DNA from: Intoshia linei
Taxonomy: Eukaryota; Animalia; Orthonectida
DNA length: 53,451 nucleotides
Assembly (NCBI GenBank): GCA_001642005.1
Contig: LWCA01000114.1
Location: 1-53,451, forward strand
Direction of reading: 5' to 3'
Shown here: piece after piece, positions 3,321 to 37,300 of the stretch
How positions within the stretch are numbered: the stretch's first letter is position 1
How the letters are laid out: each line of letters opens with the position of its first letter
The notes under the pieces: model-generated
What the model was told of the DNA's origin: nothing
Databases searched by the model: none
What the model saw: the letters and a program-made list of their open reading frames with translations, nothing else
Position numbers and translations under genes: made by a program

Positions 3321-3935
3321 CAGTATAACCTCCGTTATTTTCCCAAAATGGAGATTAAAAGTATCGGGCGAATAACGGAATATAATTATAATATTTATTT
3401 TTTAATTATTTTAAAATATTGCATTATTCCGACTTGTTCTTGTTTTTGTGTAACTGTTTAGATTTTTTATCTATCGTATTGCACTGATGTTAAAATTGTC
3501 ATTTTGTTTAAAATGTTTTTCAATTATATTGAAATTATATTTTACATCTATTACATTGTTTTCCTGTTTATCAGTGATAATATTGTGAGAGTTATCATTG
3601 AGAGCAATATTGGAAGAATCATCGCATAAAACTTCGTTAATTTCATTGTGATCGTAGTTATTTAATTCTTCTAATGATATAGGATCTATTAACTTAGATA
3701 TATTTATAAATTTAATATAACTTTCTATAATTTCATTATCAAATCATCGTTGATATCATTGTTAATTTCATTAATTGAAAACCCACCCTTTCTAAACCAG
3801 TTTTTTATAGTAGACGATTTGACGGAATCCCAAGAGAAATGAGCCCATATAGCTACACCTTTTAAATTGATTTTTTTAAAACATTAAAGTACTATATAAA
3901 TAAAATTAATCGGGCGAATAACGGAGATTATACTG
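3321..3935 (-). mobile_element. pogo/Tigger-type non-autonomous DNA transposon (internal deletion derivative)
   Basis: TA|CAGTATAACCTCCGTTATT ... AATAACGGAGATTATACTG|TA TIRs with TA TSD. The minus strand at ~3780-3860 reads AIWAHFSWDSVKSSTIKNWFRKGGF, the Tigger AWxxVxxxTIxNCFxKAGF motif. Confidence 0.85.
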
Positions 3936-10058: not shown

Positions 10059-13000
10059 ATGAATATTTTTTGGTTTCTTGCCACGTTTCTCACGTTTTTC
10101 TTTCAGTCGTTAGCTCAAGAAGGTATATTTTTTAAATTCATTTTCAAATTGTACACTTTTTTAGATTGCAATAGTGAAAACATTAAAGAATCCTTTTTAA
10201 ATATTCAAAACTATTTGATTAAAGAACAATGTTATGATTGCATGTAAAGTAAAAAAAAACAGTTTTTTATTTTTTTTAGAAACAAAACATTTAATTTAAC
10301 TTTTAAAATGTTGGATTTTTGTACAAATAATCACACATATGTAGGAATCTTAAAAAATCTTGCATTTGATTCAAATACAAATAAATGTAATAACTCAACG
10401 TTTGTAACTCCTCTAAAAAAAAGTATTCTCTGCCATTTAGAGAATACGGATTGTGTTCCAGTTTTCACGTTAGATGATATTATAAATACTAATCAATTTT
10501 GCTCGTAATATTATTTACTTTAAAAAGTATTAATTTTTATTTCAATTATTAGAAAATTTATTAAACTAATTGATTGTATTCGTAATACATTTATTGAAAA
10601 TGACGACTATGCATTTGCTGTAAGGGAGTATATTCAAAACACTATTGGAAAAGTTGCTACAACTATTTGTATAGATAATCCTTGCGTCAGAGAACCATGC
10701 AACAGCGGAAAATGTATTCTTGATAATAGCACACAAGGATTTTATTGTGAATGTCAAGACTGTTTTACCGGAGATTATTGTCTACAAGGTTGTTTTAATA
10801 ATTACTTGTTTTAGAAGCCAATATACATTAATAATGTAATATAGCATAATTATGTTTTTTTAATATGTTGGTAAAAATCAATGTGTCAAAATACTTTTGT
10901 CACATTTTAATTAATAATGACTTATTATTATTTAGACGTTATATTATTTCATGACAATTTACTTGTGTGTATTGTATATTAGATCAGTGCTTTTCAACCA
11001 GGGGGTTGCGAAATTTGAAAATTTTATGAATACATTTATTTATTTTAATATATTATTGACAGTAATAATGTTACGGAAATATTTTTACATTTTGAAAATT
11101 TTTGGGTTACGAACACCAAATAGTTTAAAACCACTGTATTAGGGTGTCACATTTTGTGGGTGAAAATTTTAAAATTTCTTTGGCGTCTAGTGTGATTTGG
11201 TGTATTCGTAAAACCATGGGGTCAGAACCCCAAATTACTTTTCTTTTTTTAATGAAAACAGCGCTAGAATTTCAAAAAATTTTTGCAATTTTTGCAATTT
11301 TTTTATGCAAATAGATAAAAAAAATATAAAAATTTTCAAAAATTGGTGATAGATCGAGAATTCGTCTGCGACACACAAATGTGTTGCAATTCGCTACACC
11401 TGTTATAAAGCACTGACCTAATGTATATTTAATTTTTAAATGTTTATTTATTCAAATTATATTCAAATATTAAATATTAATTAAGGTCACGTTTCTAAAA
11501 TTAGTAATTAAAATTAACCAAGTTTAAATAAAACAATAGCTATGAAGATTAAATAGGCATAGTATCTGTCGAATACAAGTGCATTGATATCTATTTATCA
11601 AATACTTTACATTTTAAACCAAAGGTCGCCAATGTATTCGACGTACATCCAAACGGGTGCATAATGAATCTACGACAGAAATATTTATATTCTTTGGAAT
11701 CTAAATAAAATTATGATAACAATGCGAAAATTCAACAAAATCATCATATCATAACTTTTATAAAATTGAATGTCTCTGTGTGTATGTTTTTCAGTTTTTA
11801 ACAATAACTAAGAATCGTAGAATTTTAACAAACACAAATTCCCAGTCAGATTTTTCAATCTCAGAAACTTACCTTTTTCTGATCAAAAACCACAATTATT
11901 CTTTATCATAAAAAAATTATTATTATTTATTTTTTAAAGTATTTTATATGTCCGACGTTCTCAAATTTTTTTAAAAGACGATATTTCCCCAAATATTAAT
12001 TTATTCATGAATGGTGGGCCACATTTACAAATTTATGAATAAATGGCTAAAAATTGAATATTTTAGGAAACCCAAATTGTACCTAAACCAGTGTTACCTA
12101 ACCGTTGGCTAGGAAACACTAGTGGTGCCTGGGAAATTTTGCGAATTTATTGAAATTATGAAAATTTTAGATCAATGTAATTTTAATTTTGTAAAATACT
12201 AGCTTGACTGTTATGTACTTCGTACAAACCAGTTAAAATTAAAAATATCCAGAATTAATGTTTTATAAAATGCTGTAACTTTATGCATTATTTAAAAAAC
12301 GGTTTCTGATGTATATATTTATAATAATAGATAATACTATGATGTTACATTCTTGCCAAAGTTTATGCTCTTTAAAATTTTGAGCTGAATTTATTATAAA
12401 TAATAATAATAAATTTATTAAAAAAAATATAATTTGGGTTTTTAATTTTGAAGAACTGATGATCTGAAATTAAAATTTGCGATAACACCACTTTCGAAAA
12501 ACTGTTAGAAATTGGTTATTTTAATTGTATGACTTAAATTTTAAATTAATTAATGTTTTAAAATCATTAGAATTATCGGTTGCCTAATTTAATACAAATG
12601 ATTGTACTATTTTGGGTAGTAAAGGAGTAATAACTTACATGTATAAAAAATAAATACTAGATTAAGTTGTTCTGTTCTCTTGAATTTAAAAAATCATATC
12701 CTATAACGTAAAAACAGTAAACTAATTATTTTAATGAAATACATATATTTATATCAAATTTGGGAAAATAAGACATGCAAAGTTTTTTTCACCAGTTTTT
12801 TCATTTCATTTAAATTAAGAACCAGTAAATTCTTTAAATATCATAAAATTTTAAAAGTTCCGTATGCTTATGTAATTGTAATTTATATATATTAATCCCT
12901 ACCAGGGATTCCCTGGTTTAAAATTTTATCAAAGTTGATATGAAATTAAATTCGACTACCATGGAAATTCTACATAAAACAGTAATAAAAATAGATTAAG

Positions 13001-16000
13001 CAATATTACCGATTTTTAAATTTTAGGTAGATTTGACAACATTAGTTACATTGCATGTGGTAAGTCACCACTGGTGACAACAGTGGTAGTTGATGTAAAT
13101 CACAACTTGCGTTAAATTAAAACGAAATGTCAGTTTTGGTGGTTGTAAATGGAGAAAAATAATATTTTTTTTAAAAAAATTGAAAAGGTACATTATTCAT
13201 TAAGTTAAGTTAATTCGTTAAGTGTTAACGGAACTTTCATTTTCATTGTAAATTTGATATAACAAAAGTAATCAAATTTTGTTAAGTAACATGTAACATG
13301 CAAGTTTACCACAAATTATTTTTGAAATATAATTTGGCAATGTCTATGTCTCGCGAAATGTTTAGTTGTTTATAGGAATCGTGATATGAAAAGGTTAAGA
13401 ACCACTGGACTAATGTATATCATGGTCTCTCTAGAGTTTTTAATTTATAATAATGTTAAATTTGTAAAACCATTAAATAAAATGTATGAATTTAGATAAA
13501 AAAAAAGGATGTAGTGTTCATGACTGGGAAATATGTTTCATGAGACATTATGATAAAATATCAAAATACATAGAAAAACTGGATTTACAATCATTAGCTT
13601 GCGAGTATATATATATTTTTCACAGTATAAATATATTCGATGTAGAATACCTTTAATAATTAAAGACTGCGTTTTGTCTTCCGAGGTGTGTTATTCATAC
13701 GAAGAAAAATTGCGATATAATATGATGAAACGATTTGCAGAGTTTTTAAATTTTTCGTGTATATCTGATTCTATGGGTAAACATTTAAATCGTTTACATT
13801 ATATTACATACAGATAGTATGTAGATAATATATATATATTATTATTATAATATATAAATATTAAATTTTTAGATAGCATTGCAACGAACTTTTATACAAA
13901 TGTCATGTCTCCTTCGTGTGTGTCTGGGTTTGACAAATGTGAAAAATTCATTTCTAACATGTTTATTTTTATTATAAAAAACTAACCAATTTGTAAATAA
14001 TGTTTTAATAACAATATCACAATAATTGGTATAAATTAATTTACATAAATTTATTTTAGGCTAACTACAACCCGTACATTAAATAATATGCGATTATATC
14101 AGCACGTTGATGATTTTATTCAATTTTACAATTGTTTTGAGCCATACATGAGTATTTGTTTCAAAGATTCATTGGAAGAAATTAAAAATATTGCTAGTGA
14201 AATTTATTCTCAGGTTTCACCTCCGTTTCTAAATTTACCTTGTTACGAAACAAAACAGTGCATTACTGCATTTGACGTGATTTTTAACTATGAATCATAT
14301 GGTGGTTACAATCTAATGTCTCAACTTTTGTTTGCTAATGAGACTAAAAGTTATGATCCAATAGATGTGATAAAATATAAAAAGTATATTATAATCATAT
14401 TTATTTGAAAATTTTTTAGTGATTTGATTAAAGCAAAAAACTGTATTCAAAACAACAAATGTGACGATATTTTTGAAATGGACGAAGTTTATACAGACAT
14501 TAAAATACGTGAAAATTTAGTATCAAAATTTATTGAAATTGATCTATGTGATGATGGTAAACGTTGTGCTAATAAGGGTTATTGTTATTCAAATATATGC
14601 TATTGCATACCAGGTTATTCAGGGAATATGTGCGAGGATGGTATTAATATTCAAATTTTAATATATGTAATGTAGTTAATGATAACTGCAACTTGTCGGC
14701 TATTGTTGATTGTTTAGCCACTGCGAATGCTAAAATTAATAAAGCTGCAGGAATGCGAAAATTCTTTTTTTACGACAGATTCCAGAATCATACTATATTT
14801 CTTAATACTACTCTAAACTCTTGTGGGTTGGTCATTTAAATTTTATTTTATTAACATTTTATATTAGGTATAATAACCATTTAAATGATTGCATTACTAA
14901 GACAACAAAAACATGTGACTTTAAAGGATTAACAAATGAAAATACTATTAAACTTATGAATAAACAGTGTGCAGTAAATTCGTATATAGGTAATTTTTTA
15001 ATAAATAATAAGTCAACCAAATAAAAATTTAGTTTTTTTAATCAAAAGCTCAACTGATTTATCATACATAATGTAGTTAAATAATTTATTTTTAAAGTAT
15101 ATTTTCCTGTTTTAAGCCAGAATATACATGTATCACTGATACAAATGTGTTATATTTTAAAAAATACAGCACTATCCAGAAAAACCTGTTATTTTTTTAA
15201 TGTCGGTAAAAATAATTTGCTATTAACCAGCTTAAGCCATTATGATAAAACTAAATACAATATCATAAACTCAACCTATACTTTGTAAATTTAAAATCTA
15301 AGTTTTTAAATTACATTGTATGAGTAAAATTTGAATATAACTTTCATATTTAAGTTAAAATTTTTTCTATTTTAGTTTTACATGTTTCACGTGTGCATTT
15401 TAGTTTGATACATTTATTTATACATCTTATAGACACAACATGCATTGGAAATTGCACACGTAACAAATGCAAAGATGATGGTTATTGTATAGGTGGTGAT
15501 TTTTACGAAAGAGGTTACAAATGTGTTTGCAAGGAAGACGTTGTAGGATATAATTGCGAATGTAATTAAATTAAATATTAGCAATGAACTGTATTCTTAG
15601 TTGGAAAAATCACTTGTGATGTTGATTACGTTAATAAAGTGTTAAACGATATATTGAAAGCTGGACAAGATTCATGTGATAACTACGATTGCGGGTATTG
15701 TTAGAATTAAACTTAATAATACATTTAGATCATTGAATGACGAAGTCAATAATATAATCGAAAGATTAATTAACCACTGTCAAAGTAAAGCTGAAGTCCG
15801 TTACATAATTCAAAACTTATACTATCTCAATGGGATAGGTTGGTCACTTTGTGATGTCGGTAACGTTATATTCATATTTATATACATTTGTAAAAACTAG
15901 CACCTTCATGTCAAAGTTACAATGATTTACTTTCAAATGTGGACTTTACAGATGTATTAAGGGGTATTGTCGCTAATATGGGAAGTATTGATTGTGATTA

Positions 16001-19000
16001 CTTGAACAATATTCGATATAAGATATTTCTCAAATATACGGATTGCCCTGACAAGGGAATGTGTTATTCTGCTTTGAAAGCATACGATAAGTTTCATTAT
16101 GCATTATCTGGTTACATGTGTTCACCTCCATGTAATGATATATACAAATGCTCTTCAATAAATGAAATATGTGTAGATTTGGGAAGAACTAGTGATTGTC
16201 AGAGTATTTTTATTACATAATTATATAAAAATCTTATTGGTGCATTGAAATGGCCACTGTATGCGAACCTAGTTTAATTATTGACAACGGTAAGGACAAA
16301 TTGAGTTAACATTTTAAAATTGTAATCGTTTGAATCTGTTATTATTTTTTTATTTTCGGGAATATTCAGTACTTTCTGGTGTCGTCATGGGTCAGCCGTT
16401 AAATTAGATGAAATACTGCTATTAATCATCACAGGTAAAAAAACAGTTATCGCGCAAAGCGAATCATGAAAGATCGCTTCGTTAGAACTCTGGTGTTTTT
16501 ATTGTTATGGTCTATTTTTGACACTTTGTTTCTCTCTTTGAAATATCCTTCTAAACGATTCGCAATTAGGTTCATAGAACTGATTTATTATAACATAAAA
16601 TATTATTTGTATAAATTCAATTATATTTTGGTCCTTAAAATTACGGAGAAACATCTATGACATGGGTATTTTTACTAATCATGCCGTACGATGTTTTTGC
16701 TGTCATTCAATGGCCATTTACAAATTTGTCATACTCTAGCTTATTATTAACTTCATTTATTTATTCCATTAGAACCAAATTGTGATTTTGCAAATATCAA
16801 CAGCTGTTATGATACCATTTTACGGGCAATAATCAATTGTAGTTGCTCAAACGAAAAATTTAATTAGTAATTATATATTATGGATAATATACAAGGTACT
16901 AACATACCTAATTCGAGACAGTAATTTTTTAAGTACAAGCTTGTAAATAAGAAAAATAAAATATAGTAAAAAAATTTTAAATATTCATACTGATATTTTT
17001 GTCACTGATTTTTTTCAATATAGTGGTTTCTGTATGTATTTTACGAAGGTTTAGGACAATACTTCGTTTTTCATTTATATGTAACAAAATATTTGTTTAT
17101 GAAAATTTTGTAAAGGTTATAAGCATAAACTTTAAATTTTCAGTAATAAAAATCTAAAAAAATTTAATCCACACATGATTTTTAAAATCTCGTCAGCACA
17201 ACCGAACTTTGTGATTTAGACCTAATTTATATTCTGTCCTCCAATCGTAACTTATTCAAGAATGAACAATCCTAGTATTTAAAAAAAAAAATCAATTATT
17301 ATGCATCATTGTCCTGATAATGCCTTTGAAAAATCATATTACGGATTTATTACTCAATATTTTGCAAAATTTAAAATTAACATGATAACTAACAATTTCA
17401 CAATTTTATCAATAAAATATTGGTGATAAACGTGTTGACTAAGTAATCAAAAACAAATTAATTTAAAATTAAAATTTTATAATGTTTTGTAACTATCGAT
17501 TTCGAAATTTAATTTGATTTTAAATTTATTATTAAATTTTTAATTTTCATATAATTTGACTACAATTTGGTTTTTAAAACTAAAAATTAATTCCAATATT
17601 AATTTTAATATAAAGTAAAGTAAAATAATAATTTTACGTTTTGTCAATATTGTTATCTTTCGGTTATTTTATAATTTCATTTTTTCTTGAATTCAAATTG
17701 TTAATTAAAAATAATCAAGTTAAAATAGATTATAATTACAAATTATGTATACTAAACAGAAACAACTGTAACTGAAAACTGAAGTGAAATATATTATGCC
17801 TTATAATTAGGGATATGTAAAAATATTTGTAGGAATGTCAAGGTTATAATTTACAATAACTATTTCACCGATATTAATGCGGTTTATAAACTAAATCGTT
17901 TATAGTTTGAACGCGTCATATATTATAGATTACTTTAGCCATGAATTGGATAAATGCAATGAATTATTGAATGCATGCTATCCAAACGAATCAAGTTTAT
18001 TAAAATCTATTGGTAAAACATCTAGATATTGTTACCAAGAAAATAAAAATTGCAATCCTTCTAAAATTATAGCTTGTGTGTCTGAATTTAAAGATGATTT
18101 TATTTCAGCAATCAATTCAAATTCAACAGTTTGTAATTATCAGAGTAGATTGAAGACTTGTTTTGAAAGTGTTGACACATTCAACAATAATTATAAAGTA
18201 TATGAATTGGAACGTTACGAAACTAATGGAATGTGCAAAAATGTTGCATGTTATATTAACCATTGTCATAGTGGAGGAGTATGCAGTACCGATATGTTTG
18301 GTAATCAAGTTTGTAAATGTCCAGATTGTTATGATGGTAAAACGTGTGGCGTTTCGAAATTGACATCATTTTGTTCATTACCTGCAGCAATGAGTTGTAC
18401 TTTCATTTCTCTTGGTGATATATTCGTTAAAAAACCTCCAAAAATTATATATATTTTAACACAAAATATATTTTCTAATAGTACTAATGCACTTAGTATA
18501 ACTGATGATCAACAACACGAAATTGAAACTTTTATAAAAATTTCGATTAACAACATTTGTTATGGTTTAGAATTTATTGATAAGTGCTTCGATAAATGGA
18601 CTTCAGATTGTGTTTTAACCGGAAACATTACTAGATTAAATTTTATCGATATTATTCGAAATTTTGTTAAGGAACAATGTTTAAATGAAGACGAATTATT
18701 TGATTTGATTAAATCTACACTATTTTCATGTTATTCGCATGTGAGTAAAGTGGCATCTTGCGCCGAAGCTGAATTAAACAAGATTGACTCTTTTGTAGAA
18801 ATACCCAATTTGGTGGAAATTTATCAATACATAACAAACATTTATTCTTGTATCAAACCGACATTATTGCAATGTTCTCCTGTAGCTAATTTGCTTTTTG
18901 AATCAATCTTAGCCGAGATTAAAAATTCGGCAGACAATTCAGTTAAATGTTTGATATCAAACGGTTGTTTGAGTAAAATGGTTTCTGATATTGAAATTAA

Positions 19001-22000
19001 TTATACCTTCAATATTTCTCTTAGTGTGCCATTTAGTGATGTTGTCAAATGTATTAATGAAGATATATGCTTACCTATATATAAAATTGAATATTTTGCT
19101 AAAGTAATGAACTATGCTTTTGCTTATGACTACAAAAATATAACAGTGTTATTTGAAACTCCAATATGTCAATTAGATATTTGTATTGCTGAAATGATGT
19201 CTACTATATATAATAAAAATCATAGAAAATGCTTGGATAGAAAAGAGGAATGTTATCATTCTTCATCTGTTAAAGACGCTTGTACCACATTAATTAGTGT
19301 GAGAAGGTGCCAGAAAAATAATCAATGTTTTAAATTATATACCAGTCATGAAAGCCTATATTGCAAAACTTTACATACTCTATCATTAATGTGCTCTGGT
19401 GGGTGTATAAATGATCCTTGTAAGAATGGATCAAAATGTGAAGGTCAAGGAATGTCTGAGTATTATTGTATGTGTAAATCCGGAAATTACGGGAAAAATT
19501 GTGAAAATGAATACCCAAAGCAATGTATAGCAGAAGAATTAAATCAATATTTGATTACAGCACTTAAAACATATTCAAATGTGCATTGCGACGATTCAAC
19601 CAAGTTAGAAATGTGTAAATCTGGACGAGCTTACGATTACAAAAATCTCCTTTTATATTATACTCAAATACAGAGTAATGGTGGAAGATTATGTAATGAT
19701 GTTACAACCAATCTAATAAGTGGAATAGTATATACCTTTGCCCAATATAGTATAGATTGTAGATCTAATAACGACGAAAAAGACCAAATTTGTCTTTACA
19801 GTGACATGGTTATTAGTTGTTTCGAGTCATATTTAGAAACAATAATTAAATATAGTATAAATAATAATAATAGTAATAAATGTGTTTACATGTTGAAAAT
19901 GCGAAAATGTATTATGGAAACATTACAAGATTGTCATTCAGATGTGTGTAAAAACCATTTAAGAGCAATAAACCAAATATCGACCACCATAAATTGTCAA
20001 TTACCTTGTTCTAACGACAAAACATGTTCATATGGAAAATTGTGTAAAGATAAAGGCGATAAAGAGGAATGTTTGGATCCAGACTGTTCTAATTTTGGCA
20101 TTGCAGACTGCATCGAAAAAACTGTAAATTTACTAGATGGAGTTTGTGGAAATGGTTATGATTACCCACAAAATTATGATTCAAAACCAGACTACCCCGA
20201 ACAACCAAAAGACCCTAATCGTGATTATTACGATCCAATTACAACTGGTGAATGTCAATTTCAGGAAACTGATTCAAATGAAAAATTTTGTTACGATACA
20301 TTTGTAATTTGTCGTGATCAGGGTTCAATAATACGTGACACAATTGATTACATGCTAGATGACTTAAAAAATGCCATGGACCCTTGCGGTAAAATGATGC
20401 ATCGTAGTCTACATTGTGGGTTAGCAAAATATATAAGCGAATGTATTGATTATAAGGATTGGGCAGATTCAATTCTTACTCAAATGATGCCACCTCAAAA
20501 TCACCCTTGGTGTGTATTTAGTTTAGAAAGTCTGCAATGCATGGAAGGACAAATGTTTAAAAACAGTTTCAACAGTATTACCATACAACAAGGAATAATG
20601 AGTCTAAAAAAACATCCATTGTGCCAAAAATATAATGTACTGATGTTATGCTATCCTAACCCTTGCTTAAACTCAGGAAAGTGTTTTGTTCAAGAATTTG
20701 CCAATGAATATGAGTGTATTTGTTCATCTTGCTATAGTGGTGATAAATGTGAATTTGCTAATTCGTCAATGTTAGTCGAATCTACGGAAGGAAATTTTCC
20801 TACCACAAACTATGTTGAATTTAGTAAGCAATGCAATACTGATCAAGTTGGAGTATGTGTTTATGAAACGATTATGAACTATATAGGAAAGAACGGTAAA
20901 CTATTTGAAAATATTGATATAAGCAACATGACCGATGTAATGAATAGTATATGTGGTTTGATTAAGGAATTAAAATTTTGTATAGACATTTTTGCATATG
21001 ACTGTAAATCTAGTAATTATAAAGTTGTGCTAGACATTATAAAAAAGGTTTTTAATTACACAAATAATCAATGTTCAAATCTCTATATATTTGGTTTAAG
21101 ATTAATGAAAATTATTATGTGCGTACAAACCGTAAACACTGACGAATTGTTGAAAAATCTTTATTATGAATATTTCCTTCCACGTATGGATAAATTCTTG
21201 AGTATAAAGTTACTCACTCCTACTTTACCATATTTGAGTCAGCATTATGATTTTATCAGTGAATCTTTTACTGAACTTTTAAAATACATTCCAGTGTGTA
21301 TTTTAGATAATACAAAAGTAGAAATTTCTCTCATTTCAGATATTATTGATTCCTTGAATCCTTTGTATCAAAACTGTTGGAATGCAAAAAAATGCATAAA
21401 TCAATTTGATGATGAAACATATGACAAGTTTTCTTCAAACCCAATTTTGATGTACCCAATTGCAATGAACATTACTGATTGTTATATTCGTTATGAAAAA
21501 GCTATAAACTGTATAGAAGCTGGATTTATTGATCCGACTTGTACTACTGTTGAAGTTATAGAAGTAGAATCTTATCTATTGGCTAGAAAGAAAAGTTTGT
21601 TTAAACTATACGACATTGAAGAACATCACGTATGTTATAAAAAAGTAGTCTGTCGAAATGGTGGTAAATGTGTACGAGGTACAGATTTGGACAAGTACAC
21701 CTGCAGGTGTCGCCAAGGTTATTCAGGTGATGAATGTCAACTTTCAAATGGAAAGGACTGTTATAATGAACACAACGATCAATGTATTCTCGAATTTCAA
21801 AGTGAATTAGACATGCAAATGCACTTTCTTTGTAGCCATACATATAAAAGTAACTTAGCTGATACTAGATTGAATTTCCAATTTCAAAATTGCGAGCTTC
21901 AAAATAAGGATACTTGTTATGCCATTAAAAAAGTAATGGGATGCATGATGGAAGGTGATATAGATTGTCTATCAAATGATTTGTCCACATTGGAAGCGAA

Positions 22001-25000
22001 ATATTGCAAATTACTTGTTAAAGCAAATACATCATGCCACCAGAAATGTATTAGGGATCATTGTTTAAATGGTGGTATTTGCTATACTCAATTAATTGAT
22101 GTGAGTTCTATGTTTAAATATACTCGTTGTTCTTGTTCTGATGGGTATAGTGGAGAAATATGTGAACTAATCGAAGAAGAATCTTGCAACAAGGACGAAA
22201 TCATTAATTCTTTAAAAAAATACAGCTCCATGGCCATTGAATCATGGTGTGACAGTAATAAATCTGATGAACATTGCGAAGGAGAAAATAACCATTTCAT
22301 TGAAATTGAGAAATACGTTATGTATGCTTCTAAGAATTGCTCAGATACTGTTAAATTATACTTAAACAGTATTTTTAAATATAGTAGATTTGAATGTGCA
22401 TATATCGGTTTCACAAAATTGCAAAATTTTGATAAGGGTTGTGCGGCATCTAGTAGGTTTGTTGATTGTTTGGATTATGATGAATTATTTAATACTTTGA
22501 TGTACCCTGATCGTTTTAGTATGGAGGATATATGCAAGTCTTCTATGAATAGAAGAAAATGTATATATGATGCTACATCTGATTGTACTGATCTATTATG
22601 TATAAGTGTTAGAGAAAACTCTGATAAAGTTTTACATGCAATGGGCATTCCAGAATGTAATATTCCATGTTACGACGAATATGCATGTCCAATAACGACT
22701 GATTGTATCGATTTGGGAGATAGACAGAATTGTCATATTAAAGAAGCAGATGTCATGCGCTGTAATAAAAAATCTGTGGAAATGGGTTTACGTGATTACA
22801 CATTGATAGTGATGGATGCTTATTGTGACATAGATACAGCCAGATTGTACTGTGAAGAAAATACTTTTGTAAAATTGGAAAACGATATAAATGAATATAT
22901 AAAGCATTGCGATGAAGATTCCAGGAAACTGACAGAATCACTATTAATGAAGTTTGATTGTGATCATATCCCAATTCGCAACGAAAACGAATCTGTGGAA
23001 GGTTGTAAGCTAAAATGGAAGGTTAGAAATTGCTTTGATTATGACGGTGCGTTCGATATGTTTAAAAATTTTACAATTTTACCATACATAGATGATATTT
23101 GCACGGAAATTATGAATGTACGAGGTTGTGTACATGATTCTATTAAAGGATGCACTGATGAATTATGTAATATTGTTAAAAAAGTTACAGATGAACAGAT
23201 TAATAAGATATCTTTGGGTAAATGTGAAATCCCTTGTGCTAAAAATTATTGCAACGATGAAGAGTGCATTGATACTGGAACGGATTATGATTGTTCCGGT
23301 AATTCGTCAGAATGTAATTTGTATGAATTGGAAAATGTTATAAAAAATTACACTAAAGTGCTTTTCGAAACATTATGTAGCGCAGATAAGGCCACTGAGC
23401 ACTGTTCAAACAATCAATTTGAAATGATAAAGTTACATATCAACGAATCCAAACGATCTTGCAATTCATCAGTCATTTCACATGTTGATGCAATGATGGA
23501 TGATATCTTCGAATGTCAATATGAATCGTACCTCAATCGTAATGAATTTACTCAAGGGTGCAAAGTTTCAATGCATATTCAACATTGTTTATATAGTGGT
23601 GATATTATGTCATTTGATGAAATCAATTCAAACGAAATCTGTCGCAAGGCTCTTCAAAAAAGAAAATGTTTATTCGATGCTACAAGTGAATGTACCGATG
23701 ATATTTGTAGTAAAACTAGAGAAAAGTTTGATGCAATAATGGGAAAACTTTCAAATTACACTTGCAAACCTCCGTGTGAATACGAAGCTCAATTTTGTCC
23801 AAACGGTCACGTTTGTGTAGATACTGGTGATGATTATATATGTCAAGATTCCAAGGCTATGTGTACACATGAAAGTATTAATAGATGTATAAATAAAGCT
23901 TTCGAAACTATTCATGGTACCGTTTGTGATGGTCCAATGTTGAAAAGGGAATATCGTAAATCGCCTATTGACGGCTTAGTTAAAAATTTTATTAACAAAG
24001 TTAATAAAAACATGACTCAGTCTGATTATTTTATTGAATATGATAAAGAATTATTTGATTCTAGTTGTCAAGAAATTCCACAAGATGTTTTGACATGCCT
24101 CAACGTTTTCGATGCATGCCCAACTGAACATGACGATTTCTTTTTGGACGTTGTAGAAATTTTTAAACTTGTCATTAGTCACGTGTGCAATCCAGTTATC
24201 TTAATACCTGTAGAATTTAATATGATTTGTTCTGGTAAAGATATCTTCCTAAAATGTACTCATAATGTCAACTTTGCATCTCCTTATTATGGATCAAAAG
24301 AGGATTATTGTGAATTTTCAGATAATACTCTCAATTGTTTCGAAGAAAGTTCTAAAAATTCGAATCAATTGATGCAGTCAATGTTGATACAAAGTTTAGG
24401 TGAATTTAGGTTTTCTTTAGCTTATGACAACATGTGTCAAAGCTATGATCCCTGCTATCACAATCCTTGTTACAATGGAGGAGTGTGTAGTCATGAAAAT
24501 AATGTTTTGACATGTACATGCCCTCACTGTTATACTGGAGAGTTTTGCAATATATATTCTCCAATTTACATAAAAAATCTAGTTATAGAATATAATAAAA
24601 ACAGCATTATCGACAAGACATATCACGGATTTGCTAAACAGTGCAGTTTAAATCAGTTTTCAGTTTGTACTATTACATTATTTTATGATTCCATTGATAA
24701 AATCATTAATTTAATAAAAAATACGCCATTCGATATAGAAAATATGTATCCATTCATTCAAATGGGTTGTGATATTTTGAAAAATTTACAAAAATGCTTA
24801 GAATATTTTACTTCAGATTGTCAAACAACTACTAAACTAAGATTTTTCAATATAATCAAAGAACCAATAGAATTTTTACAAAATATTTGCTTTGATTTTA
24901 CACTAATTGGCAAATATATGGAAGTCACACAATGTTTTGGTGATTTAGATATGCAAAATGTAGGAAATAATATATTAAACAAATGTATAATTCCAAATAT

Positions 25001-28000
25001 GTCCAGTTTATTAGAAATTAAAGTGATACAACCCACTTTACCTTATCTACATCTTTATTATGACCTGATTCATAACCTTCAAACATGTGTCACGGATCAA
25101 TTACCGCTCTGCATTCTTGAAAAATTGAACGATCTTAAAATAATATTGGACAAAGTTATTGATCAACTGAATCCTTCTCATCAAAAATGTTTGGGTGCGA
25201 AAGAGTGTATATCCAACTTTGATTCAAATGTATACGGTTATAAATTGGTTCCACTTTTCCCGTTTTTCAAGGAATCTTTGGGTTTAGACGATGTTTACGA
25301 CATTTATGAACAAACACATGATTGCATTAAACAAAGTATAAACTTGGATTCACAATCTTGCAATATTTATGAATCTGCTGAGTTGTGGGCATTTTTACAA
25401 GCTAGAATGATTAGTGTTTTGGTTAGATTTGAAGATTCTGAAATACATCCATGTTTCAGAAATGTTTGTGATAATGGAACATGTGTTCGTTTAAGTCAGT
25501 TTTATAAATGTGAATGTTTTGATGGTTTTACTGGTGACAAGTGTTCTGATAGAATTGGTTGTAGTGATGATTTATATACAAAATGTATTTATGATGTGCA
25601 ATCTATATTGGATATGATTCCTCATCCTATATGCAATAAGGAATATGGTGAAGATGGTAAAAACGATTTATCAAATTGCATAGTTATGGATTTGCCCGAT
25701 TATTGCTCGTAATTATTACCATGTTAATTTATATTTTACTATAAGATGTGGAATGTTTAGTTTTTTATTCTAAAACTTATTGGCATAAAAACTAGATTTC
25801 GAGACGATTTTTAATAATTTAATATATTTTCAACTTATATTTTTATGTGTGATGAAAATTAATTGTATCAAAAAATTCTTTCAACAATGTTTTTATTTTT
25901 ATATTAAAGTTTAGAATCTAAACTCGAGATTAATTACAAAAATATTAATTATAAAATTTTTGTACCGCTGAATAGGAAATGAAAAATAGTAGAATTATGA
26001 AAGTTTTGGTTGGAGCTACAAATTTAATTTTTTTGAAAAATTTTCAGATACTATGTATATTAATACTTGTCATTGTTATCCTTACTTATCCTTTACTTAC
26101 ATTGTATATAAAATTAAAAGTTTGTGTATTACAATTTAATTAACAAATTTAGAGTCTTAGAACTTCTAATAGTTTTTCGAGATTGAGATCGATATTTTTT
26201 CGCAAATATTATACTCATAAATTTAAATAAGTGAAGTAAAAATAAACTATCAATAGAGTAAACACGCCTCTATCAAAAAATGTAGTTCCATTATGGAACT
26301 TCTATAACAAAAAGTATTCAAATGGAATGTTGACACTTTAATATTTGAAACAAGCAATTAAATTTACTAGCAATAATAGCATATCATAAATTTATATTAT
26401 TTCCTGCGAATCAAAAAAATAATAGATAAATGGGCGTTTTGATAGTCTAATGATTAGACTCTAATACCTAAGATTGAAATCTCATTTTGTACATACATTT
26501 ATATATTTAGTAATTTTTAAAATCTCACATAAGATATTTTGGTATGTGAGATATAAGAGATGTAATGTTACTTTTCATGTATTCTATATATTTTTAAACA
26601 AAATAAAATAGTTTTGTTAATTTTTATTTATTTTTACCATTAATATCTTGACTGAAACTATTGTATCAGATAGGAATTGACATTTCCATTGGAATTTATA
26701 ATAATTGAGATACTAACTAATATGATGGAATTTGAATTTGTTCATTTGAGGCCAAGGTCACATTTATATCTATTTTTAATGTAATCTAGAGCTGTCGAAT
26801 CATTTACGGATTGTTTGGGAGTAGACTATATTGCTGAAGCTTGTAAATTGGAGGACGATAAGAATAAACAAATTTGCGATCTTTATGTGAATGCAAACAC
26901 ATTATGCTATCAAAAATGTATACAAAATCCATGTGAAAATGGCGGGAAATGTATGAGTGAACGAGAAGGATTATTTGAATATAAGTACGAATGTGAATGT
27001 CCAGAAGGATTTAAAGGAGAAAATTGTGAAATTGGTGGTAATACAACCACTGAAATCCCTAATCCTGATGTAAACCCACTTATATGTGATAACAATGATG
27101 TTGCAATGTTAATAAACGACATTTATAAAAATTCTTCCTTGCTAAAATGTTTATCTTTCAAGGAAGCTACTGAAATTTGCGAGTATGATATTTATGCAAT
27201 TTTTATAAATATTTTTTTAGCTCAAATAAAATTTCATTGGCCCAAAAGAATATTGATAAATTAAGTTTAGTATGCTCGTTTATTGTTACTAATATACTCA
27301 TTTCTGTACAAAACAAGAATAACCATATTGAAAATTATTGCAGTGGAAACGATTGGCAGCCTCGTAATATAATTTTGACCTGTTGGTATAATTTTTAACT
27401 TAGTTGAAATGGCGGATTGTGTCAACAATAATTTTGTTTTGGCGTGTTTTAATTTTAAGGATTACATTAATGATGCAGAAAGTGATGATTCAATTACCAA
27501 GGTCTCATGCGAGTAACTATTTTTCCCGTAAAATGTATAAAATGTTTTAGTAAATACTACCAGAGTAGAAGATGTGTTTTCAACCAAATTGAAGAAAATT
27601 GTCAAAACGAAGAATGTATTTCAAAGATGACTGCAATGCTTAAAAATATTGCAAAGGACATTTATAATAATAAATGTGTAGATCTCAACTGTGATGATGA
27701 TTGCAGGATTGGCGAAATTTGTAAAGATTACGGAGATGTTGCTCTATGTCAAAAAGGTTTAAAAAAAAATCTTTTTACAATAAATGTAGATCCAAATTAT
27801 ACTACTACAACAAAGACCACAAAAGCAACTACCCTTTCATCGTCAAATGAAGAAATTGGTAAATTAAACTTTTTTTGAAAAAATTAGAAATTTATAAAAT
27901 TTAGATATTGCCATTGAAATTATACTGGACATTCCTTTTAAACAAGATTACAAGGATCTGAAAAATCAAAATACACAACAATTTATTAAAGATTTGGCCG

Positions 28001-28837
28001 CATCGGTTAAAATTATTTTTCCAATTCATAATTTTATTTTATTAATTGAATTAAAGCTAATAAAAATTTAGCTATCCAAGATACACGATAATCGACCAAT
28101 CAAAATCAAAAAATTAATGTAATCATGTTTTTGATAATTGCAAATAATTCCATTTAGTGCTGGAAGTGTAAAAGTAGAATACGAAGTCGTTTATGATGGA
28201 CCAATCAATGATGAAAAAATTAAAGAAATGATTGAAGCAATAAAAGATCATATCAATAGTGAAGGGTCAATAACAATAAATGATATCCCAGTTGGTATCA
28301 GTGAAAGTGCTCATTTACTCATTAACGATAAAAAGGGTACCTTTTTTCTATTTAATAGTTTACTAAATGTTTTCATATAGTGGAAAATATTGACAACATG
28401 TGCTCACTTTATAATGCCGCTGAACGTTGCAAACACAACTCGAGTTGTTATTTAGATGAAAATGCTCAAGCAAATTGCGCGTATTTATATTATTATTTTT
28501 AAAAATAATTGAAATTAGATGTTCTGTTGGGTTCAATGGAATTTTTTGTGAAAAAATAAACCCAGAGTCGCCATACATCATTGGACCAACTGAAATGGCC
28601 ATTATTATTGGTAGTGTTGTAGCGTGTGTTTTAATTATTGCACTTTTTATTCTTTGTATGACAATCAAACGTGGAACACGATAGTATCAATTCATTTTAA
28701 TATTTTATTTTATATTTTCATTTAGTCGAAATTTTAACAATGCTATTCCAATGACTACGTTTCCCAGAAATGCTCCAAAAACTAATTACGGTCAAAACCC
28801 TGGACCTTCGCAAGTAGTTTATAGCAAACGACATTAG
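10059..28837 (+). CDS. Giant (~4000 aa) type I membrane protein: signal peptide, repeated Cys-rich helical modules and EGF domains, SEA, EGF, TM, short tail
   Basis: Signal-like MNIFWFLATFLTFFFQSLAQE. About 28 exons, phase-compatible where checked, including 17906-25708 (7803 bp). 12 EGF domains. SEA-like DIPFKQDYKDLKNQNTQQF...AGSVKVEY. TM MAIIIGSVVACVLIIALFILCMTI. Tail ends QVVYSKRH* (TAG 28835-28837). Confidence 0.85.
10985..11136 (+). mobile_element. hAT MITE, deletion derivative of the 39611-40303 element
   Basis: CAGTG...CCACTG termini, degenerate 8-bp TSD TATTAGAT/TATTAGGG. Interior closely matches both ends of 39611-40303. Confidence 0.75.
12199..12235 (-). mobile_element. Helitron 3' terminus
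   Basis: Minus strand TGTAC-GAA-GTACA hairpin, then TAACAGTCAAG-CTAG|T. Same end at 4842, and degenerate copies at ~40865 and ~42321. Confidence 0.65.
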
Positions 28838-29619
28838 TCTTAATTTACTAACCTTTAGGATATAATAAATTATTAAATTTATACATTTTATTATTTTTAT
28901 GAATTGGTTATTATTATTGACACATGATGAAAAACGGTAGATAAAATTTAAAATAAATACTGTAAATATCGATTTAAAAGTTCAAATAATATTGATCAAT
29001 TTAGTTTAAATATTTTAAACAGATTTATATATAGTTAGTAAATTTTCCAAATTATTTTTTAAACATGTTCAGGAAATTAAATTTGTAGACTGGCGGTTCG
29101 TAGACAGAATAATTGGTGGGTTGCTAAAAAAAATATAGTTATACATTTTTGGACAAAAAAAGTAAGAATTTGAAGTTGTTTAATGAAGTTTTTAATTGAT
29201 AATACAGATTATACATCAAAGCTGCTAAAAAGTTTACCTATATGCCACATTTCATTAATATATTTGGAAAATCACTGGGACTGGACAATCAAAAGTAAAA
29301 GTAAAATTAGAAAAGTTAATTAATCAATGATTTTATCATTTGTTTTCTTCATTTACCCTTAAAACATCTTTAGAATGTTTAAACATACTTAAAGCAAGTT
29401 TAATTTTATATATTTATTAAATATATTTTATTCCATCTTAATTTTTTTGTTAACATTTGAATTTTACAAAAATTTTTAAAACAATTGTTATCATATTTTT
29501 TTAATTTATTAGACAGAATGTGTGTATAATATTAAAAGTAAAGTAAAAACAGTCCAATCCTAAAAATTGTCATAAATAGCATAAATTCCAGAAAAAATAA
29601 AATTGATAAAAACGTATTT

Positions 29620-34300: not shown

Positions 34301-37300
34301 TGAGCAACTTTAAAAAAAATTTAATTTTGAAATTTGGTTAAACTAAATGTATGAAAGGGTTAAGTCAATTTTGTACACAAAACATCTAAATTTGGTTTTT
34401 TCTTTTGGAATCAGATAGAGAGATTTCCGATATAAAATTTTGATAAAATTGTCTTTTCTTAAGGATTGGTGAAATGGAGTTTTTTCTTTTGGGATCTGAT
34501 ACAGTTATTTTTTATCTAAAAATATTGGTATAAAGAGATTTTTTCCTTAAGGGTAAAATTTTGGTTTTTTCACATATTTGACTAAATTGAGTAAAATATG
34601 TTCATAAATGATCAATTAAGTTAAAGTGGCCAGAAAAATACGTACTATCACGTTTAGTTTATTTGGTATAAATTTTAAGTCGAAAATTTTTATTCGTCAT
34701 CATCGATAAGTAGTTTTGGCTTTACATTTAACACCAAATAAACTAAATTGATAGTACGTATTTTTTCTGGCCCCTTTAATTAAGTCGAAATTTTTCGAAA
34801 GTGTGGTCATAGCGTAAATTTCATTTGCAGAAATTAAGTCCTTCAAGGTAAAAAACCCCAATTATCTTTTTTTTTTAAATGCAAACCAATCCTATAATTA
34901 TTAAACATAACCAATCTGATAAAGATTTTAAAAGTATCAAAATTATGATAAATTTAAATTTCAAAATCTTATATCTTCACTGTCAAAACTCCAAATTACC
35001 TTTTTTTAAAAATTAAAAATGTCCTAGATTTTTATTAAATATATAAAATATTAAACACGAAATTTTAGGTCTACTAATAAAGTATTTGAGTTTTAATTCG
35101 AACCACTCTTGTAATTGCACAATTTTCTATAATTATGTTATTGTAGGTTCAAGCTGAAGGTGTACTGCTATTTGTATTTTGAAATTAAGACAATAGAGAT
35201 ATTATTTTGATCACCCAATGGTAGTCCAAAATAGTATTTAATGCATATTTCGTAATTGGTTTACATGATTTTCTAAGTGTTTACTCTCCATAAATAAAAC
35301 AACTTTGGTCAAGGTAATTTTTACATTTTCGACAATGAATTAATTATAATAATAATCAAAATTAATAAAAATTACTATAAAGTATATTATCTCATTAATC
35401 AATTTTTAATTATCAATGCTGTAAAATTTTTCCATGGAGTATAAAGTGAAGATAGAATACCATTGTCAAATAAAATTTAATTTATTCGTTTCCATCACGG
35501 AAACAATTTTTGTTACTAAAAACCGCCTACGTTAAAACTACAAGTATTCACTAGAACGGCTCATTTAAAACAATTTAGTTAAAATATAAAAATAAAATAT
35601 TGCTTGGAAATAAAAATGCATGGATTATTCTCCCAATTATACTACCAAAACTTTCACAAATCTCATGAAAAAATATTTCCAAAAAATCCAAAACTCATGA
35701 ATTGTATTCAAAAAATATTCATTAATGAAATAACAAGACATGAAAAAGATTTTAAATATAATATAAATATAAATAATTTGATAATAAATACCATTAAATC
35801 CATTAAAAACGTTTTCAAGATGACATTTTATTAGAACGTGATTATTGAAATGGACATCTTGAGCATCATCAAAGGTATCATCTAATAAACCAGATTCTAT
35901 GGACGGATCGATAGTTTTTTTAGATTCATTACTTTGAATTAAATCGTTTAATCTTGTAGTAATAGTGGAAAGATAATATATCCAATTCAACGAATATTGA
36001 GCTCTTAAAATACGAATACAATGGAAAAATTTATACAACATTTTGGCTTGATTAAAATCGATCCCTCGAAAAAGTGTTTCATTGCATGTTTCAGTAAAAA
36101 CAGAACAACACTGATTCAACAATTTCTCAACATTTTGTTTCATGAGAGGACTTTTTGGTGAACGTCTTTGTTTAGTGATTGCATTATGTTTATTTGATCG
36201 GTTTGACAAAGATATCTGATTATCACTATTTGAAATTCCCGTCATATTTAATGACGAAGTTTCATTCATTTCAATATTTTCTAAAACGTGTATTGGTACG
36301 GCTGGCGATGGTTGAGGAAAATTAGTAAATCTTTGTTTCAGTCGGACTACAATTGAATTAAAATAAGAATTTGAAAATTCCTTGATTAATTTATCGTTAA
36401 TTATGACTGACTCGCAAACTTTGGGGTGTATATAACGAGTAATATATAATTTCCACCATGGACTAAAAGAGATTGGATTGCCATAAATCTTTAATTTTTT
36501 TAAGCAATATAAAGAATATATTGGAACAAATACATTGTCTTGTTTTAATTTATTATATGAAACGTTCAAGTATTCTAAATTGACCAGTTTCTGAATTCCT
36601 TCAAGGGTAGTTAAGTGGTTATACTGTAAATTCAAATAAGTCAAATTTTGATGAATTAAAACAGAAAGCAAAGTAAATGTTTTCAAATGGTTGTGAGAAA
36701 CGTTTAATTTCTCCAATTTTATATTAGCTGCATCAAGAACATGTAAATCTTTAATTTTGTTAAAACTGAGATTCAAATTTACGACAACTGGTAATAAACT
36801 CATAGTATCTAATAAATAATTAATTTTATTGTTAGAAAGGTCCAAATATTGTAAATTCATCCATTTTTCAGGTTCATTTGAAAGATCACCATAAAATTGC
36901 AAAACTGTTTTAATATCTTTAATTCTTGATTCATTCCACACCAATTTTTGTAAATTATTTTGAAATTCATGCAAACCAAATACCATTAGCGGAGATATTT
37001 TCTTGAATCTAAGTATTTTTACCGTTTTAGAAATAATATTCAAATTTGCTTCAGATTCCATATAAATATTTGGAAATATTTGAATTTTTCTAGCAGCCAT
37101 CAACATGTCCACTATTGTAGATACATAATATCTCTGGTAATCTTCTTCAGTGTCAGGCAAAATTGTGTAATCGTAATCCAGCGCAAAACCTGATTCACTG
37201 TAACGTTCATAAACATAGTTTAAATGAGCTGCGTCAATGAAAACTACGCCTTTGCCATTCACAATTATGTCTGCATGTTCTTTAAAATTTTCTACCAATT

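What the first reader, a model, noticed from the sequence alone, without database searches (positions are those of the whole stretch)
10059..28837. Giant surface receptor with an architecture I do not recognise: Cys-rich helical/EGF super-repeats on a mucin-type SEA-EGF-TM anchor
Seen: ~4000 aa with signal peptide, about 20 or more Cys-rich modules (C-x6-C ... C-x6-C spacing, amphipathic pattern) interleaved with 12 EGFs, then Thr-rich linker, SEA, EGF, TM and a ~40-aa tail. Known: SEA-EGF-TM ends typify transmembrane mucins such as MUC3/12/13/17, but those carry PTS repeats. Notch and Crumbs have LNR/ANK or LamG domains, none of which are visible here. Inference: a lineage-specific adhesion, coat or ligand-capture receptor, and the best candidate here for an undescribed system.
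Basis: partly seen in the sequence, partly recalled or inferred. Interest (0 to 1): 0.85.

Follow-up and report, generated by a model that had tools for sequence, protein, structure and literature searches.

The report
Giant orthonectid surface protein, novel modules
This is a real, expressed 12-kb gene of the tiny parasitic worm Intoshia linei that encodes a roughly 4000-residue membrane-anchored surface protein; its building blocks are cysteine-rich helical modules found so far only in this species, it sits on a mucin-style SEA-EGF-membrane anchor, and its function is untested.

Summary
The stretch is one 28-exon gene, GenBank hypothetical protein A3Q56_01458 of Intoshia linei (3964 aa). RNA contigs from three runs remove every 3' intron, and one 11,969-nt contig is long enough for the whole CDS.

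- **Architecture.** Signal peptide, then four super-repeats, then a 23-aa Thr-rich linker, a SEA-like domain (G|SVKV), an EGF, a TM helix and a 43-aa tail. Each super-repeat reads X, 7/8-Cys EGF, Y, EGF, (Z, EGF), then one to three W.
- **Modules.** X, Y, Z and W have no Pfam or PDB sequence match and are not detectably related to each other.
- **Folds.** AlphaFold models of W (pLDDT 87.8) and Y (73.8) are disulfide-rich helical bundles with no convincing PDB fold match.
- **Distribution.** A Y profile run against 1.84 billion representative proteins hit only Intoshia proteins: this gene and a collinear paralog at 34% identity, split over two contigs. A third, single-unit copy exists and is unannotated.
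- **SEA call.** Pfam misses it. The motif, a language-model lead and a split-chain prediction (0.63 versus 0.02 in controls) support it.

My best reading is a non-mucin analogue of transmembrane mucins: a stiff protein coat or cuticle tether with a breakaway anchor. That function is inferred. Earlier scan notes cover this same stretch only, not other DNA.

The parts
10059..28837 (+). Whole coding region of A3Q56_01458 (28 exons, 3964 aa). The mRNA ends near 28881 with a poly(A) tail.
   Evidence: Exact exon mapping of P0001. RNA contigs skip the ten 3' introns with GT..AG ends, and the X2 contig ends at 28881 followed by A's.
10059..10121 (+). Exon 1: signal peptide (aa 1-20) plus the first residue of the mature chain.
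   Evidence: Hydrophobic N-terminus read from the sequence. The paralog fragment P0003 starts with a similar leader.
10164..16202 (+). [not shown]
   Evidence: Collinear with paralog fragment P0003. Intron repeats.
16775..20117 (+). Super-repeat 2 (aa 804-1560): X2, 7-Cys EGF (18249-18347), Y2 (18378-19403), EGF (19404-19502), W2 (from 19503). It has no Z-EGF pair.
17940..25709 (+). Giant exon of 7.77 kb (aa 835-3424) without introns. It is shared, with the same 3' boundary (...DYCS/T), by the paralog and by the third locus.
20118..23873 (+). [not shown]
   Evidence: The W model has pLDDT 87.8. The paralog has two W modules here instead of three.
23874..27755 (+). [not shown]
   Evidence: The junction 25709>26790 is spliced in all three RNA runs.
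27789..27857 (+). Thr/Ser-rich linker of 23 aa. It is the only mucin-like stretch and is absent from the annotated paralog.
27904..28335 (+). SEA-like domain (aa 3731-3839) in three exons (27904-28005, 28072-28116, 28159-28335). The G|S site of the G|SVKV motif lies at 28162-28167.
   Evidence: The motif is conserved as G|SIIV in the paralog. The three best named language-model clusters are all SEA. The two halves cut at G|S are predicted to reassemble. Pfam SEA gives no hit.
28380..28555 (+). Juxtamembrane six-Cys EGF (aa 3840-3885), in two exons.
   Evidence: Conserved in the paralog.
28592..28663 (+). Transmembrane helix (aa 3898-3921).
   Evidence: Hydrophobic stretch followed by KRGTR. 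Conserved in position in the paralog.
28664..28837 (+). Cytoplasmic tail of 43 aa (28664-28681 and 28727-28834) plus the stop codon. It is not conserved in the paralog as annotated and has no PDZ-type end.

Best explanation
Shown:
- One expressed gene encodes a 3964-aa type-I membrane protein that is one of two full-length paralogs in Intoshia linei.
- Those four module kinds have no detectable relatives outside this species in the searches run here.
- The chain is tied to the membrane by a short Thr-rich linker, a SEA-like domain, one EGF, a TM helix and a short tail that is not conserved in the paralog.

Inferred mechanism:
- The protein works like a transmembrane mucin whose glycan bottle-brush has been replaced by a disulfide-stapled protein rod.
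- Such a rod would be long, stiff and protease-resistant. It would stand on the apical surface and form, or tether, the surface coat. Orthonectids have a microvillar cuticle.
- The SEA-like domain carries a G|S[V/I]xV site in its beta2-beta3 hairpin. If it self-cleaves as in mucins, the ectodomain is held only by a beta-sheet. It can then break away under force or be shed, which would spare the membrane.
- The short, unconserved tail argues for a structural or barrier role rather than signalling.
For: - Gene and transcript. Searches give the identity and the exon map. In one search all ten 3' introns are removed in contigs of three runs. An 11,969-nt contig reaches back by length across the whole CDS, and there is a poly(A) end at 28881.
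- Architecture..
- Module kinds are distinct. Pairwise hhalign probabilities are 1% or less.
- No Pfam family other than EGF.
- No PDB sequence relative.
- Y profile against 1.84 billion representatives: only P0001, P0002 and P0003, all Intoshia linei.
- The paralog is collinear from signal peptide to TM, with 34% identity over the giant exon. The architecture is therefore maintained by selection.
- Not a mucin. S+T+P is 15% of the ectodomain and never exceeds 24 per 100 aa.
- SEA-like domain. G|SVKV and G|SIIV fit the mucin cleavage motif G|S[V/I]VV (PMC13643018). The three best named atlas clusters are SEA, at 0.84-0.80.
- Split-chain prediction. The halves cut at G|S score 0.63 against a best control of 0.02. 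Partner pLDDT is at least 77 and the runs share at least 94% of contacts. That mark was reached by 51 of 78 solved complexes and by 2 of 108 mismatched pairs. The strand after the cut lies between the two N-terminal strands, as in a beta-alpha-beta-beta-alpha-beta sheet.
- Biology. Orthonectids have a microvillar cuticle (PMC6543705, PMC12249979). The force-release role of SEA is described in PMC13643018.
Against: - No experiment or localisation bears on function.
- Stage- or tissue-specific expression could not be read, because only contigs were available and the run labels are coded.
- Pfam SEA does not match either paralog even at E 10. No solved SEA chain matches by sequence. SEA membership therefore rests on indirect support.
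- The third residue after the cut is Lys or Ile rather than Val, so cleavage is unproven.
- Only the Y module was searched exhaustively outside this genome.
- Other orthonectid proteomes may be absent from the libraries, so 'species-only' may really mean 'orthonectid-only' or wider.
- The structure models rest on alignments of only 6-7 internal or paralogous copies. A missing PDB match does not prove a new fold.
Confidence: 0.55

Rival explanations
1. It is a recognition or adhesion receptor, for example for gamete recognition between the short-lived free adults or for attachment to host tissue. The variable helical modules would be the binding surfaces, and the SEA-EGF-TM part would be no more than the anchor.
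For: - It has a large modular ectodomain with 17 Cys-stabilised modules and 43 N-glycosylation sequons.
- The family is lineage-restricted and fast-diverging: paralogs share 34% identity and W copy number differs. This is typical of reproductive and host-interface proteins (general knowledge).
- A third, possibly secreted single-unit copy could be a soluble partner or decoy.
Against: - No known adhesion domain (cadherin, Ig, FN3, lectin, LRR) is present.
- The tail is short and not conserved.
- Nothing identifies a ligand.
- The four-super-repeat order is strictly conserved between paralogs, which suits a spacer or rod as well as a binder.
Confidence: 0.2
2. It is a very diverged orthologue of a known bilaterian apical-matrix or attachment protein. 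Candidates are the EGF-SEA-TM kind exemplified by nematode MUA-3/MUP-4, or some uncharacterised annelid relative. Its modules would be unrecognisable only because orthonectid sequences evolve very fast.
For: - The layout is the same in general terms: signal peptide, EGFs, SEA-type module near the membrane, single TM (PMC2150763).
- Orthonectids are known for extreme rates of sequence evolution (PMC12249979).
- Only one module kind was searched exhaustively.
Against: - There is no vWFA and no contiguous EGF array, and the tail is 43 aa against 213 aa in MUP-4 (PMC2150763).
- The helical modules make up about 85% of the ectodomain and have no counterpart in those proteins.
- The Y profile found nothing outside Intoshia even at E 0.001.
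- The W and Y models match no solved fold.
Confidence: 0.15
3. It is a force- or cleavage-gated signalling receptor. Pulling on the giant ectodomain would open the SEA-like domain, much as the SEA-like HD domain opens in Notch, and would release the membrane stub for signalling.
For: - A SEA-like juxtamembrane domain with a G|S site sits next to an EGF and a TM.
- SEA domains unfold under force (PMC13643018).
Against: - The tail is 43 aa, has no recognisable motif or domain, and is not conserved in the paralog.
- No LNR or ANK domain is present.
Confidence: 0.07
4. The model is an annotation artefact that joins several separate genes.
For: - Long introns of 2707, 1075 and 1081 bp stand out in a genome whose introns are about 40 bp.
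Against: - Contigs from three RNA runs splice the giant exon in frame to all downstream exons.
- One contig is 11,969 nt long and starts about 190 nt before the ATG by length bookkeeping.
- The paralog is collinear over the whole length, including the 5' third.
- The longest intron is filled with dispersed repeats, which explains its size.
Confidence: 0.03

Closest known systems
SEA-type transmembrane mucins (MUC3/12/13/17, MUC1)
   Same: - Type-I orientation with a very large ectodomain whose bulk is coded by one giant exon. MUC17's PTS domain is also coded by a single exon (PMC13643018).
- A juxtamembrane SEA-type domain with a G|S[V/I]xV site, an EGF next to it, a single TM and a short tail.
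   Different: - There is no PTS/O-glycan tandem-repeat domain. S+T+P is 15%, and the only such stretch is a 23-aa Thr-rich linker.
- The ectodomain is instead a chain of disulfide-rich helical modules and EGFs.
- The tail has no PDZ-binding end.
- Pfam's SEA model does not score.
C. elegans MUP-4 / MUA-3 (epidermis-to-cuticle attachment proteins)
   Same: - Large type-I proteins with EGF domains and SEA modules near a single TM.
- They link an apical epithelial surface to a cuticle (PMC2150763). That is the role proposed here by analogy.
   Different: - MUP-4 has 28 closely packed EGF-like repeats (14 of them calcium-binding), a vWFA domain, two SEA modules and a 213-aa filaggrin-like tail.
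- Here the EGFs are single spacers between novel helical modules, there is no vWFA, there is one SEA-like domain, and the tail is 43 aa.
Nematode DUF19 / T20D4.11-like domain (PF01579) and GFRalpha/GAS1-type Cys-rich helical domains
   Same: They are extracellular, cysteine-rich and mainly helical. The only named language-model neighbour of the W modules is a DUF19 cluster, at 0.77.
   Different: - No Pfam hit to PF01579 or to the GDNF-receptor family at E 10.
- A score of 0.77 is within chance for that tool.
- No GFRalpha chain appears in the printed Foldseek or VIA rows for W or Y.

Membership tests
SEA domain (PF01390) | Match to the family profile | tested here: not met
   - There is no SEA hit at E 10 in whole P0001 or P0002, which contain the joined domain, nor in its exons.
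- No solved SEA chain matches by sequence.
- The genome-wide six-frame scan was uninformative, because its controls were also blank.
SEA domain (PF01390) | A domain of about 110 aa with beta-alpha-beta-beta-alpha-beta order, whose two halves stay together across the beta2-beta3 hairpin | tested here: inconclusive
   - The halves cut at G|S are predicted to reassemble: score 0.63 against a best control of 0.02, partner pLDDT at least 77, at least 94% shared contacts.
- That mark was reached by 51 of 78 solved complexes and 2 of 108 mismatched pairs.
- Strand 3783-3792 contacts both 3772-3782 and 3730-3740.
- The three best named atlas clusters are SEA, at 0.84-0.80, which counts as a lead only.
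SEA domain (PF01390) | Autoproteolysis motif G|S[V/I]VV | tested here: inconclusive
   The motif is G|SVKV in P0001 and G|SIIV in the paralog, with G, S and the following VEY invariant. The consensus comes from PMC13643018. Cleavage itself cannot be tested here.
Transmembrane mucins (MUC3/12/13/17 type) | Large Pro/Thr/Ser tandem-repeat O-glycosylated domain | tested here: not met
   S+T+P is 15% of the ectodomain, with a maximum of 24 per 100 aa. The only such stretch is a 23-aa Thr-rich linker.
Transmembrane mucins (MUC3/12/13/17 type) | EGF beside the SEA domain, a single TM and a short tail | tested here: met
   A six-Cys EGF at aa 3840-3885, a TM at 3898-3921 and a tail of 43 aa. The tail ends ...KRH, which is not a class I PDZ ligand.
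MUA-3 / MUP-4 attachment proteins | vWFA domain, contiguous arrays of EGF/cbEGF repeats, and a long filaggrin-like cytoplasmic domain | tested here: not met
   Pfam finds no vWFA. The EGFs are single and lie 100-600 aa apart. The tail is 43 aa, against 213 aa in MUP-4 (PMC2150763).
Notch / Crumbs | LNR plus ANK (Notch) or laminin-G domains (Crumbs) with tandem EGF arrays | tested here: not met
   No such Pfam family appears at E 10 in P0001.
DUF19 / T20D4.11-like (PF01579) | Match to the family profile | tested here: not met
   Ten module sequences (four W, three Y, two X and one Z) gave no PF01579 hit at E 10. The only link is an atlas score of 0.77, and shuffled proteins get a first hit of 0.8 or more a third of the time. 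A structural comparison with DUF19 models was not possible, because no AlphaFold DB library was available here.
GFRalpha / GAS1 (GDNF-receptor family domain) | Match to the family profile, or to solved GFRalpha folds | tested here: not met
   [not shown]

The most novel reading that the evidence does not exclude
X, Y, Z and W are four previously undescribed extracellular domain folds: disulfide-stapled helical bundles invented, or remodelled beyond recognition, in orthonectids. Strung between EGFs on a SEA breakaway anchor, they form a protein-only, non-glycan counterpart of a membrane mucin. That protein would be the main scaffold or tether of the orthonectid microvillar cuticle, which would explain why one of the smallest animal genomes keeps two 11-12-kb copies.
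Probability: 0.3. Interest if true: 0.7.

Novelty: new variant of a known kind. Interest (0 to 1): 0.5.

Why it matters
- **Genome economy.** Intoshia linei has one of the most reduced animal genomes, yet it keeps and expresses two giant paralogs of this protein. The protein is therefore likely central to the parasite's surface biology.
- **New domain families.** The four helical Cys-rich modules are candidates for new extracellular domain families, and one already has a confident model.
- **A general design.** If the protein is a mucin-like coat made of folded protein instead of glycan, the SEA-EGF-TM breakaway anchor is a general chassis that evolution can load with different ectodomains.
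- **A practical handle.** It would also give a molecular marker for the orthonectid cuticle or glycocalyx and for the host interface.

Tried and rejected
- **Word-based homolog search.** The giant exon found only the protein itself. It missed even the paralog at 34% identity, so I judged the tool too insensitive for this family and did not repeat it for W, X or Z.
- **Pfam.** Scans of the whole protein, of ten separate modules, of the paralog fragments and of the C-terminal exons gave EGF only.
- **PDB sequence searches.** The W and Y profiles, the SEA exon, and a two-paralog profile of that exon gave nothing credible.
- **DUF19 lead.** The atlas score was 0.77 and Pfam did not support it.
- **One ancestral unit.** The idea that X, Y, Z and W derive from one unit is not supported: hhalign probabilities are 1% or less.
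- **SEA scan of the genome.** It was blank, but so were the controls, so it is uninformative.
  - The SEA-like domain lies in three exons and has no single DNA reference, so it could not be sent on its own to Pfam or to structure prediction. It was tested only inside P0001/P0002 by id, exon by exon, and by residue range in the two-chain prediction.
Full report
**What is there**

The window is a whole 53,451-bp contig of 24-25% GC. On the + strand it carries an open frame of about 2600 codons at 17907-25712. With a per-codon stop probability of 0.089 in this composition, the chance of that frame staying open is about 1e-105.

A database search identified the frame as part of NCBI 'hypothetical protein A3Q56_01458 [Intoshia linei]' (P0001, 3964 aa). 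The organism is therefore the orthonectid Intoshia linei, a highly simplified parasitic spiralian. P0001 maps exactly onto 28 exons from 10059 to 28834. Most introns are 33-99 bp. Five are long (443-2707 bp), and the longest is filled with short dispersed repeats that recur on many contigs.

**Is it one gene?**

Three public runs hold the stretch as assembled contigs. Laid on 24000-29400, their contigs skip all ten annotated introns between 25709 and 28726 with GT..AG ends, so they are transcript assemblies. One contig ends at 28881 followed by A's.

The longest contig is 11,969 nt. Window position 24000 sits at its position 8756, whereas the annotated CDS puts 24000 at CDS position 8563. The contig therefore reaches about 190 nt upstream of the ATG, with no room for extra or missing coding exons.

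A paralog supports the 5' third independently, because it is collinear with it exon region by exon region.

**Anatomy**

The N-terminus is a signal peptide (aa 1-20). Self-comparison and alignments resolve four super-repeats with this order:
- X, about 150 aa;
- an EGF with a seventh Cys (an eighth in the first copy);
- Y, about 300 aa;
- a six-Cys EGF;
- in repeats 1, 3 and 4 only, Z (about 100 aa) followed by another EGF;
- one W (about 190 aa), or three tandem W in repeat 3.

Each W ends in a 4-Cys hairpin of pattern C-x-P-C...C...C-x-D-x-G-x3-C. This gives 17 helical modules and 11 EGFs.

After the repeats come a 23-aa Thr-rich linker, a 109-aa Cys-free segment, a twelfth EGF, a 12-aa stalk, a TM helix and a 43-aa tail.

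The protein has 307 Cys and 43 N-glycosylation sequons. The favoured Cys spacing is C-x8-C (49 seen, 12 expected). C-x6-C is not enriched, and CC never occurs (0 versus 24 expected).

**What are the modules?**

- **Pfam.** Only EGF is found, in the whole protein and in ten separately submitted modules.
- **Relation to each other.** Profiles of X, Y, Z and W are not detectably related; hhalign probabilities are 1% or less.
- **W model.** AlphaFold2, run on an alignment of seven W copies from this gene and its paralog, gave pLDDT 87.8 and pTM 0.82: nine helices followed by a beta-hairpin.
- **Y model.** Six Y copies gave a moderately confident all-helical model, pLDDT 73.8 and pTM 0.67.
- **Fold search.** Neither model has a convincing match in the PDB.
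  - Foldseek's best E-values are 0.45 and 0.3.
- **Sequence profiles against PDB.** Nothing was found.
DUF19/T20D4.11 and GFRalpha/GAS1 have no Pfam support. RGM-N and neuritin do not appear in the fold lists. The only link is a 0.77 language-model similarity of W to a nematode DUF19 cluster, which is within chance for that tool.

**Distribution**

A profile of the Y module was scored by HMMER against 1.84 billion representative proteins. It hit three proteins, all from Intoshia linei:
- P0001 itself;
- P0002 (A3Q56_01427, partial, 2836 aa);
- P0003 (A3Q56_05060, partial, 827 aa).

P0003 lies at the end of contig C2949 and is collinear with aa 1-833 of P0001, including the signal peptide. P0002 starts at the end of contig C2099 with a 2366-codon exon that is collinear with the giant exon here. 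Identity is 34% over 2250 aligned positions, the 3' boundary is the same, and there is one W fewer. P0002 continues through a SEA-like segment, an EGF and a TM. Together they are one paralogous gene split by the assembly.

Corresponding super-repeats of the two genes are more alike (Y3 36-38%) than different super-repeats within one gene (20-29%). The four-repeat plan therefore predates the duplication.

A six-frame search of the genome found a third locus at C1079:44524-46494. It is an intact 657-codon frame with a possible signal peptide that covers only X, 7-Cys EGF, Y, a degenerate EGF and the start of Z. Identity to aa 2817-3424 is 33%. No further family exons follow within the remaining 8 kb of that contig, and the locus is absent from the protein library.

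**The anchor**

Pfam's SEA model does not score in either paralog, and no solved SEA chain matches by sequence. Three indirect lines support the call.

- **Motif.** Both paralogs keep G-S-[V/I]-x-V-E-Y about 50 residues into the segment. This fits the mucin self-cleavage motif G|S[V/I]VV (PMC13643018).
- **Language-model neighbours.** For the 59-aa exon that begins one residue before that site, the three best named clusters in the atlas are all SEA clusters (0.84, 0.82, 0.80). Eight of the ten best share a family or clan with the best hit. This counts as a lead only.
- **Split-chain prediction.**
  - When the segment is cut at G|S and given as two chains, they are predicted to reassemble with a score of 0.63 against a best control of 0.02.
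  - Partner pLDDT is at least 77 and at least 94% of contacts are shared between runs. The tool's mark was reached by 51 of 78 solved complexes and 2 of 108 mismatched pairs.
  - The strand after the cut packs between the two N-terminal strands, as expected for a beta-alpha-beta-beta-alpha-beta sheet.

A pass of this kind shows likeness to known split SEA domains, not cleavage. I rate 'SEA-like fold' at about 0.85 and 'self-cleaving' at about 0.5.

The joined SEA segment has no single DNA reference. It was therefore not sent alone to Pfam or to structure prediction, and that step is left out.

**How it probably works**

Shown: it is a single-pass, expressed surface protein with a very large, folded, disulfide-rich, non-mucin ectodomain. 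S+T+P is 15% and there is no PTS domain. It sits on a SEA-like/EGF/TM anchor with a short tail that is not conserved between paralogs.

Inferred: it acts as a protein-built counterpart of a transmembrane mucin. The rod of helical bundles and EGF spacers would project far from the apical membrane to build or hold the surface coat. The SEA-like junction would be a force-sensitive breakaway or shedding point, as proposed for mucins (PMC13643018).

Orthonectids have a microvillar cuticle (PMC6543705, PMC12249979). In C. elegans, the EGF-SEA-TM proteins MUP-4 and MUA-3 tie the epidermis to the cuticle (PMC2150763). This makes a tether role plausible by analogy, although the present protein fails the membership tests for that family: it has no vWFA, no EGF arrays and no long tail.

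The main rival is a recognition or adhesion role in mating or at the host interface. A signalling role is less likely given the tail.

**Novelty and score**

The gene is already deposited, but only as a hypothetical protein. I found no paper that discusses it.

The kind of protein is known: a giant surface glycoprotein on a SEA-EGF-TM anchor. The ectodomain is new in content and, as far as the searches reach, restricted to this lineage. I file it as a new variant of a known kind and give it interest 0.5. It is well documented and yields candidate new domain families in a remarkable genome. It has no functional evidence, however, and lineage-specific extracellular proteins are common in fast-evolving parasites.

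Earlier notes of this scan (s1-786633, s1-786661, s1-786691, s1-786692) concern this same stretch. Nothing similar was reported on other DNA.

Noticed in passing
G000:C2949:12114-19734 (+) and G000:C2099:53165-38387 (-); loci L011, L014, L012, L010: A full-length paralog is split across two contig ends. GenBank has it as two 'partial' proteins, A3Q56_05060 (827 aa) and A3Q56_01427 (2836 aa). Together they are collinear with the whole protein here, so the two contigs are probably adjacent in the genome.
   Followed up: yes
G000:C1079:44524-46494 (+); loci L016, L017: A third, apparently unannotated family member. It is an intact 657-codon frame with a possible signal peptide that covers only X, 7-Cys EGF, Y, a degenerate EGF and the start of Z. 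No further family exons follow downstream. It may be a short secreted relative or a young partial duplicate.
   Followed up: partly
window 10788-13494 (intron 4): The 2.7-kb intron consists largely of short dispersed repeats of about 100-250 bp. They recur at 72-96% identity on dozens of other contigs (2026 first-look candidates). This explains why a few introns are long in a genome whose introns are about 40 bp.
   Followed up: partly
window 26172-26352 and 25810-25990 (inside the 1081-bp intron): Low-depth RNA contigs in all three runs lie inside this intron. They carry long unmatched sequence before 26237, as if an exon of another transcript or a transcribed repeat sits there.
   Followed up: no
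window 17940-25709; L012:69-7166 (-); C1079:44524-46494: The giant intron-less exon ends at the same ...P-D-Y-C-S/T boundary in all three loci, while the flanking super-repeat parts are cut into many small exons. The intron-free state therefore predates the duplications.
   Followed up: partly
window 10668-10781, 18249-18347, 20649-20750, 24453-24548: The first EGF of every super-repeat carries an extra Cys in place of the usual Gly of the C-x-C-x2-G-[FY] turn, giving C-x-C-x2-C-[FY]-x-G. The odd count suggests a disulfide to a neighbouring module.
   Followed up: partly
window 35640-37346 (-): A single-exon 569-aa open frame encodes a leucine-rich-repeat protein (Pfam LRR_4, E 5e-13). It is an unrelated neighbour.
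   Followed up: partly
window 25050: The contig of RNA run X1 reads T where the genome and the other two runs read C. This is probably an allele or strain difference.
   Followed up: no
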